DNA of 64,000 nt from assembly GCA_904063045.1 (NCBI GenBank), contig CAJFCJ010000002.1, forward strand, positions 558,001 through 622,000, given 5' to 3'. The DNA comes from Dimorphilus gyrociliatus. Taxonomy: Eukaryota > Animalia > Annelida. Positions 1,927-44,297 of the stretch are shown in pieces (position 1 is the first letter of the stretch; every line of letters starts with the position of its first letter). Below the pieces are notes generated by a model. It saw only the letters and a program-made list of their open reading frames with translations, ran no database searches and was not told the origin of the DNA. The translations under genes and the position numbers were made by a program.

Positions 1927-2959
1927 AAATCGAGTGCCCAATCGTAGTTCTTTTTCAACCCACTTCAAATGACGCTTTACTGCATATTCTACGCACTAAA
2001 TTCTGCACTGTAAACTTATAAGTTTCTAAAACGACTTCTTTTCTCTACAAGACTACGATTAACGTTGGTATAATTTTAATTTTTATAAAAATCATAGGAG
2101 TAAATTAAGATTATTTAGCCTTGTATGCTCTTTTAACTTAAATCGCTTTCAAAATCCATTAATTCTATGGAACAAGTAGCAAAGAAATCTATCTGATTAT
2201 TTTGGACAGGAGTAGAATTATTATATTTGCAGTGACAGAAAATAAAATAAGAGATAATTGTATTTAGTTTTAAACTTCTTTTCTACCTTGAATTTTCTTT
2301 TTTTACAGGTAAAAATTTCCAAAATATTCTGAGAACCAATTAGTTTAAGATCATTTATAGGACTCTGATGAATGATACACTTTTTAGCCCTTTTCCTATC
2401 TTCATATAATTTAATAACTTTAATGAACAAAGCCGATTTTGATTTATGACAAGCCATTTAGCAAACTTCTGGAGAGAATGATGACTAATATATGAAACAA
2501 TTTACAAAAATTGACCAACACATCCAGAAAAGCAGATTATTAAAACTGTTACTGCTACTTACGTCTTATTTATCAAATTAGAGTTAATAGACATATTTTC
2601 CGCTTTTTCTACTCCACTTATAGTAGAACTGCGATATTTTATTTAAGATTCAGATATTGTTAAATTTTAAGATTGCAATCGTTGACGTGTAGCGTTGTCC
2701 ATGGTTTTACCACCCAAAATATATTGGTATTCGGCTGTTGCTGCTTGTTTAATACACAGCTGTTACTAAACTCCTGTATAGTCCATTAGTTTTAATGGAT
2801 TTATATTGAGTGGACTCCACTCGAAATGAAGAATATATGATATACAGACCGTTCTCGATCAGATTTACTTAAAACTATCATTCGAATAAAAACAGCTTCA
2901 ATATTTAGAGTTATTAAGTACCGTTTTGGTTTCTTTGACTTTATAGATAACAATCACAA

Positions 2960-33500: not shown

Positions 33501-36144
33501 TACAAAAGAGAGTATATCGTTGCCTATCCTTCCTCAGAACACAAGAATGACAGATCTTCAAGTGGTTGGTTGCGAGCTAACTTTCATTCCCCACGATTTA
33601 TGCCAAAAATTGCCTTCACTTGAAAAAATGTAAGAGTGTAATGTTAGTTATTGATCAAACCTATAAAAACCCATTGATGCATACTAAATAGTCGTCTTCA
33701 CCACAACAAAATTATTAATATATCTTTTGTTGGAAAATGTACTAATCTTACGACTCTGTAAGTATTTTATAAAGATGCTGATATCTTCTATAACATAATA
33801 TTGATTAAATTTTCTTTGAAATATAAATTTTTTCCTGTTCAAACTGTTAACAGAGATGCTACACGTAATCGTATTAAGATTTTGGATGAGAAGTCATTTG
33901 TAAATCTCACTGAGCTTTTAGATCTTGTGTTACGACGAAACTTGATTGAAACCATTGACAAAAAAATTTTTTCTAATTTAAGAAATTTGGAATTACTGTA
34001 AGCTGCAGGTTCTTTTGGATTTTGCTTTCATATGATAACATTATATTTCAGAAATCTAGCAGAAAATAAAATTACATATATTCATCCAAAGGCTTTTATA
34101 AATTTAGCTAAATTGAAAAAATTGTAAGTGCTAATCACTTTTACAACAACTAATTAACATTTTTGCAATAGATACCTTGAAAAAAATTCTTTGAAAAGTC
34201 TTTCTTGGGAAGGATTACAATCACTATCAACACTAGTAGCAAGTGGAAATGAGAATCTTTTAACATTTCCGGGACCTGAAAAATTCCCAAAACTTGAGAA
34301 AATCAAAGTGCCATATGTGTACCATTGCTGTGAATACATAAAAGAAAATGAGAGTAGAATAAGACCCTATGTTAGTCTGAAATTTTCATTCTAATAAATT
34401 ACTACTACGAATACTAACACTAAAACTAAACTATAAAGAAAACGAATTCTGATTAAAACAGAATTCTCCTAAATTTATTGACTTTTTTAAATTTCAGTTT
34501 GAAAATCTAAAAAACTTAGATGTTGCTGAAAGCTTCACTTATGAGGATTCAGATCACGAGTCATCATTGCAATTTAATCATGCACCAAAAAGTACTTTGT
34601 AAGATCATTGTAAATTATTTCTAAACTTTAAATTTTTCCAGATGAATCTCTAAATGATAAGTATCCTGAATATAATTATCGCAACAACGGTGAGCAATTT
34701 ATTCCAAGCAACCAGTTTAAACCTTTAATTTATTGTTCACCGCAACCAGGTAATTCAAAAAAGAAATATAAAAAAGTAATACTATTTAAAAGTTGTTATA
34801 ACTGAAATTCTATAATTTTTAATAGATGTATTTCACCCTTGTACCGACCTCTTAAGTTGGTGGGCTCTTCGTTGCGGTTCATGGACGGTTTTTTTATTAG
34901 CTTTGCTTGGGAATTGTAAGACCTAAGAGATTTAATTGTTGATTATCATCCACAATTTAATTTCAGGTGCAGTTCTCACTGTTAATATATTCGGCAGAAG
35001 CCGAATGGACGTTCCAAGATTTTTAATTTGCAATCTTGCTGCTGCTGATTTATGTATGGGAGTATACTTAGGTTTCCTGGCCGTTGAAGATGCTTTTACG
35101 CTAGGAGAATTTAAACGATATGGGATATCATGGCAACAGTCCATTGCCTGCTCTACAGCGGGATTTTTAGCTGTTTTTTCGAGTGAACTATCAGTTTTCA
35201 CTTTAGCTGTAATAACTCTAGAGAGACTTTATGCTATCACTCATGCTGTACATTTAAATAAGCGTCTCTCTCTACGTAGAGCTACTTATATTATGGTCAT
35301 TGGTTGGATTATTGCTGTTATTATTGGTAGTTTACCTTTATTTGGAATTAGTGACTACAGAACTTTCGCCGTTTGTTTACCGTTTGATGTTTCTGATTAC
35401 AAGTCAAAGGCATACGTTTGCTCTATTCTAGTTTTAAACTGTTCAGCTTTTTTTGTCATTTTAGCAAGTTATACTAAAATGTACTATTCGATTCGTGGCT
35501 CACCTGCATGGAATTCCTCGGACTCAAGAGTCGCAAAACGAATGGCATTGCTTGTATTTACAGATTTCTTATGTTGGGCTCCAATTTCTTTCATTTCGTT
35601 GTCTGCAACCTTCCGTCTGAATTTTATTACACTGGAGCAAGCTAAAATTCTGACAATTTTCGTTCTTCCTCTAAATTCGTGTGCCAATCCTTTTTTATAC
35701 GCTATATTCACAAAGCAATTTGGCAAGGACTGTGTGCAATTATGTAGAAGAATAGAGGAAAGTTCTCTAAGTAGATCCTTGTCAAGACTCAATCAACGGC
35801 ATCTTTCGTCCTCTATGGATTCAAAGAGTTTACGAAGATTAACGAGTGCATCGTCCAGCATAAGAACGAGAAACCCCACTGACAAGAGTGACAAGTCTAC
35901 TTTAAGCTCCCAAGAATCACAGATCAAGTCAAAATGGTTAAATTTTAAATCAGCAAGGAGATGCTGGTTGAGAAAATTTTCAAGAAATAAAGAGGAAATA
36001 AGTTTACAAATGACCCGAAAGGTTAACAACAAATTTCCGTTGATTGTTTTTCAAGCCAGTCCTAAATCTTATCGGAGGACATACGATAGACATTTACAAA
36101 GTGAAAATGGCTCTATTTCTTATAGATTCGATGTCTCGTTATAA
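30580..36144 (+). CDS. rk: Bursicon receptor / rickets-type LGR (type B leucine-rich-repeat GPCR), 18 exons
   Basis: Signal exon 30580-30779, then a run of phase-2 LRR exons giving about 18 LRRs, hinge YVYHCC and FHPCTDLLSWWALRCGSW. The 7TM exon (34967-36144) has MDVPRFLICNLAAAD, ERLYAITHAVHLNKRLSL, DSRVAKRMALLVFTDF and LEQAKI..LPLNSCANPFLYAI, all closely matching Rickets. Confidence 0.93.
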
Positions 36145-37759: not shown

Positions 37760-38025
37760 AGAGATTATTTTCTATATTATTAGTATGTATGATATTCTAT
37801 CCAAGGTAGTTTGACTTATTTCATTTTCTCCAACCAATTGTTAAAATCGATAACAAAATATGTAAAAATTTAAGAACTTGCTGATAGATGGAGTTTTACC
37901 AATGTAACACTGCAGCAAAGAAAATTTGCTTATCCAGAGGGCAATACTGCCGAGTAAATTTCATCTATGCTGGAAGCAAAACATTCTGGTTGATTTTCAA
38001 GAATAGATTTCCTAAACGACTAAAA

Positions 38026-38814
38026 ATGTTTATTAACACACTAATTCTTTTAATGGCGTATGTATCGCAAGGTAAAATGGATGATGAATGTGGGAAAAAT
38101 TACTATTCCATTAAACTGAAATACTGTAAACAATTAAATCTCTGTCGAACAGTGGCCTCAATGTGCAATTGCCCCAATGATGGTCGTATAGAATGCCCTG
38201 ACAACATATGTGTCCCAAATGGAGTTAAAGTTTTCAATTGCTTAAAATGGATTAAGAGAGCTTTTATGAAAATGTGCATATTGAATTTTACACGGTGTGA
38301 TGCTAGGAATAAGTGTGTTCGTGAGGGTGAATGTGTTTCTCCTTGCTCAGAGTCAGAAAAGGAATGTACAACAGGAACAAGAAGGTGTATAGATAGAAAA
38401 CGTGAATATTGCCCTGCAGAATCTTGCCCAGATTTTAAATATAAATGTGGCTATCAGTGCTCCATATTTCCATGTGAGAAGAGGTTTCAATTCATTGATA
38501 ATGGTGCAACTCAAGAACATCAAAATGAAAACGATCCCTATTTTATACTATTCTACATTTTCATACCAATATTAACAATTATTTATTCTTTTGTCTTGTG
38601 TTTAATGTGCCATAAAAGATGTAGACTATCAACAAACCGAACAAATGAAAACACCGTTCTTGGTCCACTACCCGAACTGCCATCTTTAACAATAAGAACT
38701 GAATCTTCAGCTATTTGCAACACTAACGAAAAATACAGACTGAGAGCTATTCCTTTATCATCACCACCATCTTATAGCGAGGCTATTAATTCAATGAGAC
38801 AGGGAAGTGTTTAA
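38026..38814 (+). CDS. Cys-rich type I membrane protein, paralog A (20-Cys ectodomain, PPSY tail), intronless CDS
   Basis: Signal peptide from M47 of the ORF (MFINTLILLMAYVSQG), 20 Cys, TM (FILFYIFIPILTIIYSFVLCLMC) and a PPSY motif. Confidence 0.85.
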   Translation: MFINTLILLMAYVSQGKMDDECGKNYYSIKLKYCKQLNLCRTVASMCNCPNDGRIECPDNICVPNGVKVFNCLKWIKRAFMKMCILNFTRCDARNKCVREGECVSPCSESEKECTTGTRRCIDRKREYCPAESCPDFKYKCGYQCSIFPCEKRFQFIDNGATQEHQNENDPYFILFYIFIPILTIIYSFVLCLMCHKRCRLSTNRTNENTVLGPLPELPSLTIRTESSAICNTNEKYRLRAIPLSSPPSYSEAINSMRQGSV

Positions 38815-39256
38815 GATTTCTAATTTTCGAAGTCTTTATTTTTAACCTAAATATACATTACTTTACGCAGCTCTTTTGTTTACCTGATTTAGCACATACG
38901 TCATTTGAATATAAACTCAGTGTGTATCATCTAGTGCGAACCTTAAATTACATGGCCTTTTTAAGTTGATGAGATTGTGTATGAGTAAAGAATTCATAAC
39001 GTCAACGTTTAAGTTAAAATATTTCACTGATGTTTTTAGTAGTGAATACAGTTTTCATAGAAAAATGAGCTATATTAGCTTTTCAAATGTTTTGATGAAA
39101 AATTACAGAATTAAAATCCTCATATAATCTATCTTGGTTATGCAATATATGATATGAATCAGATGGCATTACTGTTTAAGGTGAAGGACTTATAATATCT
39201 TACTGTTGAAAATATTCATTCCCTATTTCTTGTTTATTTTTTTGAATGTTTTTGGG

Positions 39257-40027
39257 ATGCCATTCTTAGATGTTAATTTTGGATCATTTATTGTCTCAAT
39301 GTTATTTTGGAATTATGTTTACTCAGATGTGAATTGTTTATCTAAAGGATCTGATTTTAAGTATTGCAATAGGTCAGCTTCTTGTAGAAAAATACATTTT
39401 TCTTGTAACTGCTTTGAAGAAGGGGCTATAGAGTGTACTGATGGTAGATGCGAAAAAAATTTTTTTGGGGCTACTAGCTTCTGCTTTAGTCCTGCCTTTA
39501 CTACAAAATCTTCTCCATCATGTATATATGACCACAAATGGTGTACATACTCAAAAAAATGTGTACGTGATATAGATTATGCCAAAAATTGTCCAAAATA
39601 TATGTGTAGTAAAAGAAGAAAAAAATGCAAATATGGAAGAAGAAGATGCGTTGCAATGTCTGAGTATTGTGAGGAAGAAAAATGTCCAAATCCTATGGTA
39701 AAATGTGGCTATCAATGTAAGATTTCTTGTCAGCCGACTTTTGAACAGCATTCAAAAACTCACTTAATACTTTACTTTTTACTACCTGTATTCTTGGTTG
39801 TTGTCTTGTGTCTAATAATCTGCAGAAGATGTTGTCTGCAAAACACTACATCTGGCAGAAACATTGAGCAAACTGAATTGGGTCCTCTGCGAGAAAGCCA
39901 ACCAACAATACCAAACATTACACCATCCGTAGGTTGTTATAACGAACATCAACCCTCTTTTCCTCCACCGGCTTATGAAGAAGTTAGTAAAGAGGGATTG
40001 CCTTCATACGAAGATATTATTAAATAG
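39257..40027 (+). CDS. Cys-rich type I membrane protein, paralog B (20-Cys ectodomain, PPAY + LPSY tail), intronless CDS
   Basis: Likely start MPFLDV (39257). The 20 Cys are collinear with paralog A. TM LILYFLLPVFLVVVLCLIIC, followed by PPPAY and LPSY motifs. Confidence 0.85.
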   Translation: MPFLDVNFGSFIVSMLFWNYVYSDVNCLSKGSDFKYCNRSASCRKIHFSCNCFEEGAIECTDGRCEKNFFGATSFCFSPAFTTKSSPSCIYDHKWCTYSKKCVRDIDYAKNCPKYMCSKRRKKCKYGRRRCVAMSEYCEEEKCPNPMVKCGYQCKISCQPTFEQHSKTHLILYFLLPVFLVVVLCLIICRRCCLQNTTSGRNIEQTELGPLRESQPTIPNITPSVGCYNEHQPSFPPPAYEEVSKEGLPSYEDIIK

Positions 40028-40826
40028 CATGGGACAACTGATCATTTTCATAAATTCACGTCACAAATGTATGAGTCATTTGATTGATGACACGTATTTT
40101 TGCTTTATAGATTATAATAAATTTTAAATAGTTCAGACACAAATCTACACGAATAATCAAATACAATACAAGTAAATGTTTTTAATGATCTATGCTTTTA
40201 AAGACTAAGCGGAGGCAAATAAATACTGGTCTTTTGAAATTTAAATAGCAAAAATTAATATCACTGCAACCGATGGAGAGATATACAGTATAATTTCAGA
40301 AACCTTTGTAACAGTTCACGGAAATTAGGACAGCTATTGTATTCAAACTTTATAAATTATCTACAAAGTTGACAGATTTTTCAAATAATTCTCTCCAAAT
40401 GGTTAATAAAATTGTACTCTCGCAGAACATTAGATCTCAGAAAACATAATTGATCGATGGTAATGAATTCATAGGTTCTTTCAGAAGTTTCCAAATTTCT
40501 TTCAGCAATATTATCAGTAAAATAGTTAATTTTACTCAATAGATCATTTTTAGAGAAAAAATTTCAAATATATATTCTCAGTATTACATGTACTGTTTGT
40601 GTATTATGAACAGTTTCATTTTATTAGCAAACTTTTAAAAAATACGTTTATAAATTCATTCAATAATAAATATCTGTAGCTTCATCCCTAAAATATAAGT
40701 TCATATCATATTCTAATTCTCAGTTAGATGGCGGTAGAATTCGTTCCAAATTTATTCCTCATTATCTATTCAAGGTGAAGGATACATACTGCAACTAGGC
40801 TACTTTGCAAATCTGTATTGACTTGA

Positions 40827-41672
40827 ATGAAGACGAAAAACGTTCCTGATCTATTTTTATTCATCCTTACAGCTTCCAATTGTTCACCAACATTGAACAA
40901 AGACAAGGAATGCCGCAATCCAGCGGAAAAATTTTGCAATGTATCGGGTGAATGCAGAAATTCTAAATATTCTTGCTTATGTATAAATGATAAACATTTT
41001 GATTGTAATGACAAAAGGTGCGTTGACAAAGAGACTGGTTGCTCTGTTAAAAGTATGTTTAACAGTAGATATAGAGGAAAATGTATTAGAGGCTACGAAT
41101 GGTGTTCCAGAATTCTGCATTGCGTAAAAAAAAACGACTACGATCAACGCTGTAAGTCTAATTATAAAACTTATAGTCAAGCTCCGAAATGTGACAGCTT
41201 CAAGAAAATATGTAGTAGTGGACAACGATTGTGTATTGATTCTGATGAATTCTGCCCCGATGAGGGTTGTACTTATAATCTACGTAAGTGCGGATATAGA
41301 TGCTACGCTGACAGCGAAATTTGCGAATTGAATTTACAGAGTCAGTGTGATGGATCAGCGGCAATACGGTGTAACAGTGACAACAATGTTCTTATACTTT
41401 TTTACATTATTATTCCCATATTATTGATTCTTTTGGCTGCCTATGGGATGTACCAAAAATTCATAAAAAGTGTCCGTCCGACATCTTTGCCATTCCTTAA
41501 CTACGGCCTAGCAAACATGCCAGCTTCAAACCGAGATTCGAATATGGATGTGGACTGTAGTGCAAGTTCAAGTGATTCTCCGCCAAAGTACGAAGATGTA
41601 GTCAAAGAAACCCAAACGAATTATTTACATAACTTTAAAAATGAAAGCAAAAACACTAATTCCTCTGAATAA
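40827..41672 (+). CDS. Cys-rich type I membrane protein, paralog C (20+2 Cys ectodomain, PPKY tail), intronless CDS
   Basis: Signal-like N-terminus, the same 20-Cys frame plus one extra Cys pair, TM VLILFYIIIPILLILLAAYGMY and a PPKY motif. Confidence 0.85.
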   Translation: MKTKNVPDLFLFILTASNCSPTLNKDKECRNPAEKFCNVSGECRNSKYSCLCINDKHFDCNDKRCVDKETGCSVKSMFNSRYRGKCIRGYEWCSRILHCVKKNDYDQRCKSNYKTYSQAPKCDSFKKICSSGQRLCIDSDEFCPDEGCTYNLRKCGYRCYADSEICELNLQSQCDGSAAIRCNSDNNVLILFYIIIPILLILLAAYGMYQKFIKSVRPTSLPFLNYGLANMPASNRDSNMDVDCSASSSDSPPKYEDVVKETQTNYLHNFKNESKNTNSSE

Positions 41673-41848: not shown

Positions 41849-44297
41849 TTAATTGTCAATAGTGCGACCGTTACTTAAAACTACTTCAGTTAGAGGTGTT
41901 TCACGGTTCTTCGATCGCGTCGCTGATATTATTCCTCTATTTTTGCTTGATCTCGTATCCATTTTACCTTTTAAAAAGTGGGTCATCATCCTTCCCTTTC
42001 CTGGTATCTCCCTTTCTGATCGTTCTTCTGTTAGATATCCCCCAAAACTCTCTAGACACTTCATCGTATCCTCACTGATATGAATTTTCATTGCTAAATA
42101 AAAAGTTTAAAAACAAATAATACTGAGTTGAATACTTTTTAAAATCCCGGATACTAACGTACTCCTGTAGCCTCCATGATGTTAGCAATATTAACTGTAT
42201 CACCAAACAAACAATATCTCGGCATTTTAGATCCGACAACTCCAGCAACAACTGGACCTTAAAATATTGGGAGCAGATGTAAGTGATCAGATTGAACTAA
42301 TTATTCGCTTTGAAGTATCTTTAATAATCATGCTGAAGCATATAATTAGATTTCGGTTTTTACCTGTATGTATTCCAATTCGAAGCCTCAAAGTCTCTTC
42401 AGGTAGATGCTGAATATCAAACTCTTTTATACCATTTAAAAGATCCAAAGATAAAGAGCTAATTTCAGATACATGCCTCTTTCCTGTAATAAATTTAAGT
42501 CAACATGAGTTTAAAATGAAATCTTAGAAGAGCTGCATACTTATAAGTCGGATGTCACAAATTTTAACATTCTAAAGTTTAGGAAATTTCTGTATTACAA
42601 ACTAATTTTATAATAGGAATTTAAATTCCTCTTAGGTGATAATTTTACGTTAAATACATTTTTAAGTTCTGTCGGGATCGAAAAATAACACACTAAAACG
42701 TGATAACACTAATCCTTAAAATGAACAATAATCTTTTACTCTGCACTTCTAATAAATAGGCACGTATGCATGTAATTAAACTAATGGATATGTATTTTAA
42801 GATACTGGTATAGATTTGAAAATCCCACCATTTCTCTGTGGTAGTCCTGAAGCTACCATATAAGCATCTCCAATTGTCTCCACTTTGTATGCATCATATC
42901 TATCGATTGCGGTATCGAAGAAATAGTAAAGACTATTCAAAAACTGGATAACCTAATTTTTTTTAAATGATTACATTTGTATTCCATACTAGTTTAATGC
43001 TTACCTGCATGGGAGAACTTTTAGCTGAGATAGAAGTAAAACCAACAATGTCAGAAAAATATATTGTAACAGAATTAAAACTTTCAGCTGAAACCCTTTT
43101 AGATAATTTTAACTGGAGAGCAACAGACTTAGGAAGCATCTGATACAGAAGTTCATCAGATCTCTTCTTTTCCATTCGTAATTCTTTTGTTTTGCCTGAC
43201 AAGCCCAAGGCGTAATTGTGAATTGTGGCTGTTATCTTGTCTATCAAAATGATGACTATCGGACCTAAAAGTAATACTATAGCAAAGAGAAAGCTAACAC
43301 CTCCCAACTGAACATTGTTATTTGATTTCGCATCTTTGGAAACTTTTAAGATATAATCTCTGATCGTTTGTGTAAGTTTTTCAATTCCAATCAAAACTTC
43401 TTTCACATTTTTTTTCCATTTCAGAAATTCTTCATAGCTAATAATGCTAGTCTCATTGCTCATTTTCACATTAAAGTACATTATTTCATCCATTAACTCT
43501 TTTTCCATTAAATTATGTTTTTCAATTTCTGCCGTTAATATGCTAGAAATTTCTTTACTAACCTCAACTTGACTGAACGCCAAAAAATTATATTTTATGT
43601 AGTTTTGAACGAAATATGTGTCTGATCTATTAAAGAACGACTGCTTACCAAAATAGAGAGCAATGTCAAAATTCTTTTGCATTTTAATTAAGAATTTATA
43701 GGATAGAAGATCCCTCCAAATTTTCGTGTTATCAACATTTTTGGATAAAATAGTTATTGCAATCGAAAATTCATTTACTAAATCGTCATAAAATACGAAG
43801 ACTTGTTCCTTTGAAAGGCTACCATTCATAATAACGAAATGCACTTGTTGTAGCTGGCTCCGAACTGCTAGCCTGTCCTCATATATACCTTTTAGAGACC
43901 AGATGGTAATTTTCGACATCACCTTAGTGGTAATCTCAAATCTAGATGTTAAATTCCCCTTGCTTACGTGACCGTCCAAGTATTCAATTACTAAGTCTTT
44001 TTCCTTAGTTATAGAATCAATAGTGTTACCATATTCTATTACCACCAAAGTTTCTTCATAAGCCTTTTCCGTAAAATTTTTTGCACTAATAGAGCGCGCT
44101 AAACAAATAATTGCTTGTCCAAGAAGTATAACGATTGGTATAAGAGGAATAACAAGCATTTGTACAGTTTGAATTTGCTTGCCTTTTTTTGTAATAGGAT
44201 CAGCATTACAAAATCCTGATTTGATATCCACTGTACTTCCCTTAGATATATCAGAAGCAATTGAAGATCTTCGAGTAGGTATTATTTTGTTACCCAT
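41849..44297 (-). CDS. NIT-domain-type membrane guanylyl cyclase (2 TM, no kinase-homology domain)
   Basis: Exon 44297-43005 encodes TM1 ([13 protein letters not shown]), a helical sensor, TM2 and a coiled coil ([26 protein letters not shown]). Four further exons give [38 protein letters not shown] and MKIHISE. The E and C specificity residues indicate GTP. The NIT assignment is by motif resemblance. Confidence 0.88.

What the first reader, a model, noticed from the sequence alone, without database searches (positions are those of the whole stretch)
38026..41672. Tandem trio of intronless 20-cysteine membrane proteins with PPxY tails: an unrecognised receptor/adaptor family
Seen: three same-strand single-exon ORFs each encode a signal peptide, a Cys-rich ectodomain, a TM helix and a short tail. 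The 20 ectodomain Cys align one-to-one despite low identity elsewhere. The shared frame is K[YF]C-x5-C-x6-CxC-x7-C-x4-C ... C-x6-C-x5-CV ... C-x6-C-x2-G-x-R-x-C ... [YF]C-x4-C-x6-CGY[QR]C. Every tail has a PY motif (PPSY; PPAY+LPSY; PPKY). A and B share T.LGPL.E and juxtamembrane Cys. Established: PPxY/LPxY bind the WW domains of NEDD4-family ligases, as in Commissureless, NDFIP, PRRG and Shisa-like/WBP1/VOPP1 proteins, but the Shisa-like ectodomain has only about 6 Cys. Inference: the C-x6/7-C-x4/6-C[IV] units resemble the first half of LDL-A modules without the acidic Ca2+ cage. This may be a lineage-specific, diversifying family of surface proteins that couple ligand capture to ubiquitin-dependent trafficking (immune, gamete-recognition or guidance roles).
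Basis: partly seen in the sequence, partly recalled or inferred. Interest (0 to 1): 0.75.

Follow-up and report, generated by a model that had tools for sequence, protein, structure and literature searches.

The report
Worm-specific cysteine-rich PY-tail membrane proteins
Three neighbouring genes of the tiny marine worm Dimorphilus gyrociliatus, plus a fourth elsewhere, encode small single-pass membrane proteins with a 20-cysteine outer part and a tail carrying a docking motif for ubiquitin ligases; the family is new, the type familiar, the function untested.

Summary
Three same-strand, uninterrupted ORFs (A 38026-38814, B 39257-40027, C 40827-41672) encode paralogous type I membrane proteins. 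Each has a signal peptide, 20 aligned ectodomain cysteines (C has two more), one TM helix, and a tail with an aligned PPxY motif; B adds LPSY.

The genome is Dimorphilus gyrociliatus. A fourth paralogue (D: 18 Cys, PPSY+LPSY) lies on another contig. Searches of about 15 billion proteins found relatives only in one other, unidentified assembly: orthologues of C and D. These keep every cysteine, the PY motifs and a 25/25 identical TM helix, while the ectodomain is 54-66% identical, so the genes look real and constrained.

No Pfam, PDB-sequence or fold match exists. The ectodomain parses as five 4-Cys hairpin units. Two of them weakly resemble the N-terminal half of LDL-A modules, but LDL-A membership fails.

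Most likely these are PY-motif transmembrane adaptors or substrates of NEDD4-type ligases; two 4xWW-HECT genes exist in the genome. That makes them analogous to Shisa-like/WBP1/VOPP1 and LDLRAD3 proteins, but not members of those families.

It is a lineage-restricted new family of a known kind, of modest interest. Expression, ligand and WW binding are untested. Other follow-ups in this scan reported further PY-tailed membrane families elsewhere in this genome.

The parts
38026..38814 (+). Gene A: 262-aa type I membrane protein. Signal peptide MFINTLILLMAYVSQG; 20-Cys ectodomain; TM about residues 170-197; juxtamembrane Cys; NTVLGPLPE motif; PPSY at residue 247. The public model (P0002, 308 aa) starts at ATG 37888, 46 codons upstream of the signal peptide.
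39257..40027 (+). Gene B: 256 aa from the first ATG; the open frame continues upstream to TTG 39206. 20-Cys ectodomain; TM; juxtamembrane CxxxCxxCC; QTELGPLRE motif; PPAY and LPSY. This exact protein is not in the 15-billion-protein collection, so it is probably not annotated in this form.
40827..41672 (+). Gene C: 281 aa (= P0001, present in NCBI/UniRef). 22-Cys ectodomain: the 20 shared Cys plus a juxtamembrane pair. TM about residues 183-213; PPKY at 252. Its orthologue P0003 comes from another assembly.
39178..39188 (+). AAGGTGAAGGA, an exact 11-mer 18 nt before B's TTG and 69 nt before its first ATG. The same 11-mer lies at 40772-40782, 45 nt before C's ATG. It may be a shared promoter or 5'UTR remnant of the duplication. 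Its significance is weak.
   Evidence: (3 matches with up to 1 mismatch; 4 of 100 shuffles reach 3)
40772..40782 (+). Second copy of AAGGTGAAGGA, upstream of gene C.

Best explanation
A-C, together with paralogue D on another contig, form a small family restricted so far to D. gyrociliatus and one related assembly. The proteins are single-exon, type I, single-pass membrane proteins.

The outer part is a disulfide-rich rod of five (four in D) short 4-Cys units of the form C-x6-C-turn-C[IV]-x4-9-C. Each unit is predicted to form one beta-hairpin between its second and third Cys. Two units look like the N-terminal lobe of LDL-A modules that has lost the calcium-binding lobe.

The inner part is a short disordered tail with an invariant PPxY, and a second LPxY in B and D.

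The likely mechanism is inferred, not shown. The PY motifs would dock the WW domains of NEDD4-family HECT ligases, which the genome encodes. The protein, and whatever membrane partner it holds through its strictly conserved TM helix or its ectodomain, would then be ubiquitinated and sorted to endosomes or lysosomes. That would make it a PY-motif transmembrane adaptor or decoy of the Shisa-like / LDLRAD3 / PRRG kind.
For: - **Shown, architecture.**: signal peptide, 20 aligned Cys, one TM, an aligned PPxY.
- **Shown, real genes.** The ORFs are 256-308 aa against a maximum of 118 aa in shuffles. A, C and D are in NCBI as D. gyrociliatus proteins.
- **Shown, constraint.** The orthologues P0003 and P0004 keep all Cys and the PPxY/LPxY motifs. 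The TM helix is 25/25 identical in both pairs. For D the TM plus tail is 86% identical against 54% for the ectodomain (Fisher p 5e-8). Tyr and Pro inside the TM helix are invariant in all paralogues.
- **Shown, topology hint.** An N-x-S/T sequon sits at the same ectodomain place in B, C and P0003.
- **Shown, unit structure.** The AF2 models place one hairpin in each 4-Cys unit.
- **Shown, LDL-A N-lobe resemblance of units 1 and 3.**
- **Shown, candidate partners exist.** Two genes with 4 WW domains plus HECT are present.
- **Lead only.** The nearest clusters by language-model features are LDLRAD3/4, WBP1, VOPP1, TMEM92, CYYR1 and BEAN1, all with scores below 0.9. By their cluster names most are small membrane proteins; that WBP1, VOPP1, TMEM92 and CYYR1 are PY-tailed Shisa-like proteins is from PMC5578492, LDLRAD3's PPxY motifs from PMC11150648, and BEAN1 and LDLRAD4 as PY proteins from my own recall.
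- **Established knowledge.** PPxY and LPxY bind NEDD4-family WW domains (PMC8509885). Short single-pass Cys-rich PY proteins act in trafficking and degradation (PMC5578492). LDLRAD3 has 3 LDLa repeats and 2 PPxY motifs (PMC11150648).
Against:
- PY motifs also bind other WW proteins such as YAP/Yorkie, WWOX and Kibra.
- The tails are short, and outside the PY motif they are poorly conserved between paralogues.
- The structure models are of low to moderate confidence (pLDDT 61-63), so the disulfide pairing and unit boundaries are inferred.
- For C against its orthologue, the contrast between ectodomain and the rest is not significant (p 0.16).
Confidence: 0.55

Rival explanations
1. The family consists of diverged LDL-receptor class A proteins, that is degenerate LDLRAD3-like receptors. 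On this reading the ectodomain is an array of eroded LDL-A modules that still captures ligands for endocytosis.
For: - Units 1 and 3 match the N-terminal half of this genome's LDL-A repeats (hhalign probability 90% and 86%).
- Foldseek's weak top hits are almost all LDL-A arrays such as CD320, megalin, LRP2 and VLDLR (E 0.08-10).
- LDLRAD3 is among the atlas neighbours.
- LDLRAD3 has the same overall architecture, with two PPxY motifs (PMC11150648).
Against: - Pfam Ldl_recept_a is not detected even at E<=10.
- An HMM built from this genome's own LDL-A repeats, run with filters off, scores at most 9.2 bits and covers model positions 1-17/26 only. Genuine repeats in this genome score 35-55 bits.
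- The units have 4 Cys rather than 6, and there is no DxSDE calcium cage.
- With the whole-family profile the hhalign probability drops to 44% and 20%.
- VIA-align finds no fold match.
- Units 0, 2 and 4 show no LDL-A signal.
Confidence: 0.2
2. The proteins are surface recognition receptors (immune, gamete or adhesion) whose fast-evolving ectodomain is the business end. The PY motif would serve only for turnover.
For: - The ectodomain diverges much faster than the TM and tail between orthologues.
- The genes are tandemly duplicated.
- The genome paper notes that the few expanded families in this species are mostly locally duplicated immune genes (PMC7854359).
Against: - There are only four copies in the genome, so there is no large expansion.
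- No dN/dS could be computed.
- The strictly conserved TM helix and tail point to conserved intramembrane and cytosolic partners.
- Faster change in Cys-scaffold loops is also expected under mere relaxed constraint.
Confidence: 0.15
3. The PY tails recruit non-ligase WW proteins (Yorkie/YAP, Kibra, WWOX), so that the proteins tether Hippo-pathway components at the membrane.
For: The genome has further WW-domain genes besides the two WW-HECT ones. From general knowledge, PPxY/LPxY are also the motifs by which membrane-associated proteins hold YAP.
Against: Nothing specific supports this. From my own knowledge, the small single-pass Cys-rich PY proteins studied so far work mainly through NEDD4-family ligases; PMC5578492 describes the Shisa-like class only as acting in trafficking and degradation.
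Confidence: 0.07
4. The ORFs are not functional genes, being either annotation noise or decaying retrocopies.
For: B lacks an ATG at the head of its open frame and is absent from the protein collection. No transcript evidence was available.
Against: - The ORFs are more than twice as long as any in the shuffles.
- All Cys are kept in four paralogues and two orthologues, and the TM helix is identical across species.
Confidence: 0.03

Closest known systems
Shisa-like / STMC6 superfamily (Shisa, WBP1, VOPP1, TMEM92, CYYR1; Pei & Grishin 2012 as cited in PMC5578492)
   Same: Both are short single-pass proteins with a signal peptide, a Cys-rich luminal or extracellular N-terminus, aromatic residues in the TM helix, and a proline-rich tail with PPxY motifs. 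Several members are the nearest language-model neighbours.
   Different: The defining six-Cys C*C*CC*CC pattern is absent: the ectodomain has no CC pair and carries 18-22 Cys in 4-Cys units. There is no Pfam hit to Shisa, WBP-1 or VOPP1 models at E<=10. The ectodomain is about 140 aa rather than about 40.
LDLRAD3 (LRAD3)
   Same: Both are type I proteins with a modular Cys-rich ectodomain, a TM helix and a tail carrying two PY motifs. LDLRAD3 has 3 LDLa repeats and 2 PPxY motifs; its regulation of Itch and Nedd4 is known to me only from the title of Noyes et al. 2016 as listed in PMC11150648. Units 1 and 3 resemble the LDL-A N-lobe.
   Different: There is no complete LDL-A module: no calcium cage, 4 rather than 6 Cys, and at most 9.2 bits against an LDL-A HMM. 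The tail has no detectable similarity to anything else.
PRRG1-4 / Commissureless
   Same: Both are short single-pass proteins with PPxY plus LPxY in the tail. The LPSYED of B and D is like the LPSYDEAL/LPSYEQAV motif discussed in PMC5578492. Those proteins control trafficking of other receptors.
   Different: PRRG proteins have a Gla domain, and Comm has no ectodomain Cys. No sequence similarity was found.

Membership tests
LDL-receptor class A (Pfam PF00057) | Match to the Ldl_recept_a profile above its gathering score (24.1 bits) | tested here: not met
   There is no hit at E<=10 in any of the six proteins. An HMM of this genome's own LDL-A repeats, run with --max, scores at most 9.2 bits and covers the N-terminal half only.
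LDL-receptor class A (Pfam PF00057) | Six Cys per roughly 40-aa module, with the acidic D-x-S-D-E calcium cage in the C-terminal lobe | tested here: not met
   The units have four Cys in 19-27 aa, and no unit has a DxSDE cluster.
LDL-receptor class A (Pfam PF00057) | N-terminal lobe: C-x5-[FY]-x-C-x3-5-C-I hairpin | tested here: inconclusive
   Units 1 and 3 score hhalign P 1.4e-6 and 5.4e-6, and Cys-fixed shuffles reach that in 0/200 and 1/200 cases. With the full-family profile the probability is only 44% and 20%.
Shisa-like / STMC6 (Shisa, WBP1, VOPP1, TMEM92, CYYR1) | Six conserved Cys in a C*C*CC*CC pattern directly after the signal peptide (PMC5578492, citing Pei & Grishin 2012) | tested here: not met
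   The Cys spacings listed show no adjacent CC pair in any ectodomain. There are no Pfam Shisa, WBP-1 or VOPP1 hits.
Shisa-like / STMC6 (Shisa, WBP1, VOPP1, TMEM92, CYYR1) | Single TM helix followed by a cytosolic tail with PY motifs | tested here: met
   This feature is shared with many unrelated families and is not sufficient for membership.
EGF-like domains | Six Cys with the C-x-C hallmark, and a profile match | tested here: not met
   The N-terminal C-x9-11-C-x5-C-x6-C-x-C-x7-C stretch of A-C has an EGF-like spacing, but no EGF-type Pfam model matches at E<=10. D lacks this part.
NEDD4-family WW-domain ligands (functional class) | A cytosolic [PL]PxY motif that is conserved in evolution | tested here: met
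   PPxY is invariant in the alignment of six proteins, and LPxY is kept in D and P0004.
NEDD4-family WW-domain ligands (functional class) | Physical binding to WW domains and ligase-dependent ubiquitination or sorting | not testable with these tools
   I could only show that two 4xWW+HECT genes exist in the genome.

The most novel reading that the evidence does not exclude
On the most novel reading, this is a dinophilid-specific invention: a new disulfide module, a 4-Cys hairpin unit descended from the LDL-A N-lobe. Its fast-changing surface would recognise external ligands (microbial or gamete), and the signal would pass through a strictly conserved TM helix and PY tail to NEDD4-dependent endocytosis. 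That would be a compact, orphan recognition-to-ubiquitin receptor system.
Probability: 0.15. Interest if true: 0.55.

Novelty: new variant of a known kind. Interest (0 to 1): 0.3.

Why it matters
PY-motif transmembrane adaptors such as Shisa, NDFIP, PRRG/Comm and LDLRAD3 decide which receptors reach or leave the cell surface. This family shows that the same logic (Cys-rich outside, one helix, PY tail) has been assembled again on an ectodomain with no detectable relatives, in an animal with a very streamlined genome.

It also offers a small, tractable case of a truncated LDL-A-like hairpin used as a stand-alone repeat.

In practical terms, it flags one probably unannotated gene (B) and one probably over-extended gene model (A) in the D. 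gyrociliatus annotation. Without expression or binding data the wider importance is modest.

Tried and rejected
- **Pfam** scans of all six proteins at E<=10 gave only chance TM-region hits: TIC20, ABC2_membrane_3, TMEM89 and TMEM252.
- **PDB sequence search** with the family profile gave only a TM-level chance hit to GPR61 (E 0.69).
- **HMMER over 1.84 billion representatives** found only the family itself, P0004, and one spurious repetitive bacterial protein, P0005.
- **Word-indexed searches** with 3- and 6-sequence profiles, and with the TM plus tail of D alone, added no relatives.
- **AF2 of full-length B and of its ectodomain** gave pLDDT 61 and 63.
  - Foldseek against PDB had no hit at E<=0.001.
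  - VIA-align wide on the full-length model was swamped by the TM helix.
  - On the ectodomain model, the single row at Z>=2 was Z 2.2, a zinc-finger array; the pdb_via second look gave Z 2.5.
  - BFVD gave nothing.
- **Internal repeat homology** between the five units is not demonstrable (hhalign P 0.004-0.3).
- **Upstream regions** of A-D do not align apart from an 11-mer shared by B and C.
- **dN/dS** was not attempted. The paralogues are only 26-36% identical, so synonymous sites are probably saturated.
- **The species behind P0003 and P0004** (Logan assemblies) could not be identified.
Full report
**What is there**

The window is AT-rich (about 30% G+C) and is G000:C2:558001-622000 of a 78-Mb assembly. 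The identical protein of a paralogue is recorded at NCBI as 'unnamed protein product [Dimorphilus gyrociliatus]'. The genome is therefore that of the miniature annelid described in PMC7854359.

Between a rhodopsin-type GPCR exon (34936-36144, +) and a guanylate-cyclase exon (42963-44297, -) lie three + strand ORFs:

| Gene | Coordinates | Notes |
|---|---|---|
| A | 37888/38026-38814 | public model starts at 37888; signal peptide starts at 38026 |
| B | 39206/39257-40027 | open frame from TTG 39206; first ATG 39257 |
| C | 40827-41672 | |

They are 256-308 codons long. Shuffles of the same 6 kb never exceed 118 codons.

**Check of the observation**

The three products align over their whole length at 30-36% identity.
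- 19 Cys columns are invariant. The remaining Cys is present in all three but sits in a shifted loop.
- The position lists give 20 ectodomain Cys in A and B and 22 in C.
- Each protein has a hydrophobic N-terminus and one strong TM segment.
- Each has a tail in which PPxY occupies one invariant column. B has an extra LPSY.
- The NTVLGPLPE/QTELGPLRE motif and the juxtamembrane Cys clusters of A and B are present.

Two corrections apply. B's open frame starts with TTG, and its first ATG (39257) still gives a signal-peptide-like N-terminus. The family also has a fourth member, D, at G000:C1:3010872-3011549(-). D is 258 aa, lacks the first 4-Cys unit and carries PPSY plus LPSY. A six-frame profile search of the whole genome finds only these four.

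**Are the genes real?**

A, C and D are in NCBI/UniRef; B in this form is not. Only two outside relatives exist in about 15 billion proteins, both from Logan assemblies of an unidentified sample: P0003 (orthologue of C) and P0004 (orthologue of D).

These orthologues keep every Cys and the PY motifs. Identity by region is as follows:

| Pair | TM helix | Ectodomain | TM + tail | Fisher p |
|---|---|---|---|---|
| D vs P0004 | 25/25 identical | 54% | 86% | 5e-8 |
| C vs P0003 | 25/25 identical | 66% | 75% | 0.16 (not significant) |

A Tyr and a Pro inside the TM helix are invariant across all paralogues. This is the pattern of constrained, functional genes whose membrane and cytosolic parts matter most. 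Transcription itself could not be checked.

**What the ectodomain is**

No Pfam family matches at E<=10, and no PDB sequence matches.

AF2 models are of moderate confidence: pLDDT 61 for full-length B and 63 for its ectodomain. They place one beta-hairpin between the second and third Cys of each of five 4-Cys units, C-x6/7-C-x3-6-C[IV]-x3-10-C.

Fold searches are blank.
- Foldseek's best rows have E 0.08-10. Most are LDL-A arrays such as CD320, megalin/LRP2, VLDLR and ApoER2.
- VIA-align finds nothing above Z 2.5 for the ectodomain.
- BFVD gives nothing.

I tested the LDL-A lead directly, using 32 LDL-A repeats taken from this genome's own loci.
- Units 1 and 3 match the N-terminal half of the module: hhalign probability 90% and 86%, P 1.4e-6 and 5.4e-6. 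With the Cys columns fixed and the other columns shuffled, 0/200 and 1/200 trials reach these scores.
- Units 0, 2 and 4 do not match.
- The whole-family profile reaches only 44% and 20%.
- An LDL-A HMM with all filters off scores at most 9.2 bits, over model positions 1-17/26 only. Genuine repeats in this genome score 35-55 bits.

There is no calcium cage and no fifth or sixth Cys.

**How it most likely works**

The part with the clearest reading is the tail. [PL]PxY is the ligand of NEDD4-family WW domains (PMC8509885), and it is the only tail element invariant in all six proteins.

The genome encodes at least two ligases with four WW domains and a HECT domain. Language-model neighbours of B and D are LDLRAD3/4, WBP1, VOPP1, TMEM92, CYYR1 and BEAN1. 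All score below 0.9, so they are leads only.

Short single-pass, Cys-rich, PY-tailed proteins of the Shisa-like class act in trafficking and degradation of other membrane proteins (PMC5578492). LDLRAD3 joins LDLa repeats to two PPxY motifs (PMC11150648).

I therefore read the family as PY-motif transmembrane adaptors or substrates. The tail would recruit a NEDD4-type ligase, and the protein and any partner held by the invariant TM helix or the ectodomain would be ubiquitinated and sorted.

Architecture and conservation are shown here. WW binding, ubiquitination and any partner are inferred.

**Rivals**

| Reading | Confidence |
|---|---|
| Eroded LDLRAD3-like receptor | 0.20 |
| Fast-evolving recognition receptor with the PY motif used only for turnover | 0.15 |
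| Tether for non-ligase WW proteins such as Yorkie | 0.07 |
| Non-functional ORFs | 0.03 |

**Comparison and novelty**

Membership of Shisa-like/STMC6 fails on the defining C*C*CC*CC pattern. Membership of LDL-A and of EGF fails on profile and module tests. The family is thus a new, lineage-restricted family of a familiar functional kind.

A caveat applies. In databases of billions of sequences, a 25%-identical small Cys-rich homologue would fall below the E-value threshold. 'No relatives' therefore means none detectable, not none existing.

Other agents' notes on this genome mention several further PY-tailed membrane families. I did not test those.

**Limits**

- No RNA-seq data were available.
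- No coordinates of the models were available, so disulfide pairs could not be read.

Noticed in passing
G000:C1:3010872-3011549 (-) = L004:1474-2247:-: This is the fourth paralogue, D (258 aa, P0006 in NCBI). It has an 18-Cys ectodomain lacking the first unit, and PPSY plus LPSY. Its orthologue P0004 has an identical TM helix and an 83% identical tail.
   Followed up: yes
window 39206-39257: Gene B's open frame starts with TTG. The codons before the first ATG (39257) still read like a signal-peptide core that aligns with C's N-terminus, which suggests an ATG-to-TTG change and use of a downstream start. This exact protein is absent from the public protein collection, so the gene may be unannotated.
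   Followed up: partly
window 37888-38025: The public model of gene A (P0002, 308 aa) starts 46 codons upstream of the signal peptide. It is probably an over-extended longest-ORF call.
   Followed up: partly
window 39178-39188 and 40772-40782; L004 about 2282-2293 (-): An exact AAGGTGAAGGA lies 18 nt before B's TTG (69 nt before its first ATG) and 45 nt before C's ATG. D has TCAAGGTCA at a similar distance, which is the consensus of an NR5A/ERR-type nuclear-receptor half-site (from my own recall). It may be a shared promoter element, but it is statistically weak.
   Followed up: partly
L016:2005-3939:- (G000:C4) and L017:641-2938:+ (G000:C9): Two NEDD4-family-type genes, each with four WW domains followed by a HECT domain. 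They are candidate partners for the many PY-tailed membrane proteins noted in this genome.
   Followed up: partly
window 34936-36144 (+) and 42963-44297 (-): The flanking exons are a rhodopsin-family 7TM receptor (7tm_1, E 2e-32) and the HNOBA/cyclase start of a guanylate cyclase with an N-terminal TM region. I see no evident functional link to the family.
   Followed up: partly
L004 about 2385-2440 (-), upstream of gene D: A (GA)n microsatellite followed by a run of about 13 G lies about 150 nt upstream of D's start codon.
   Followed up: no
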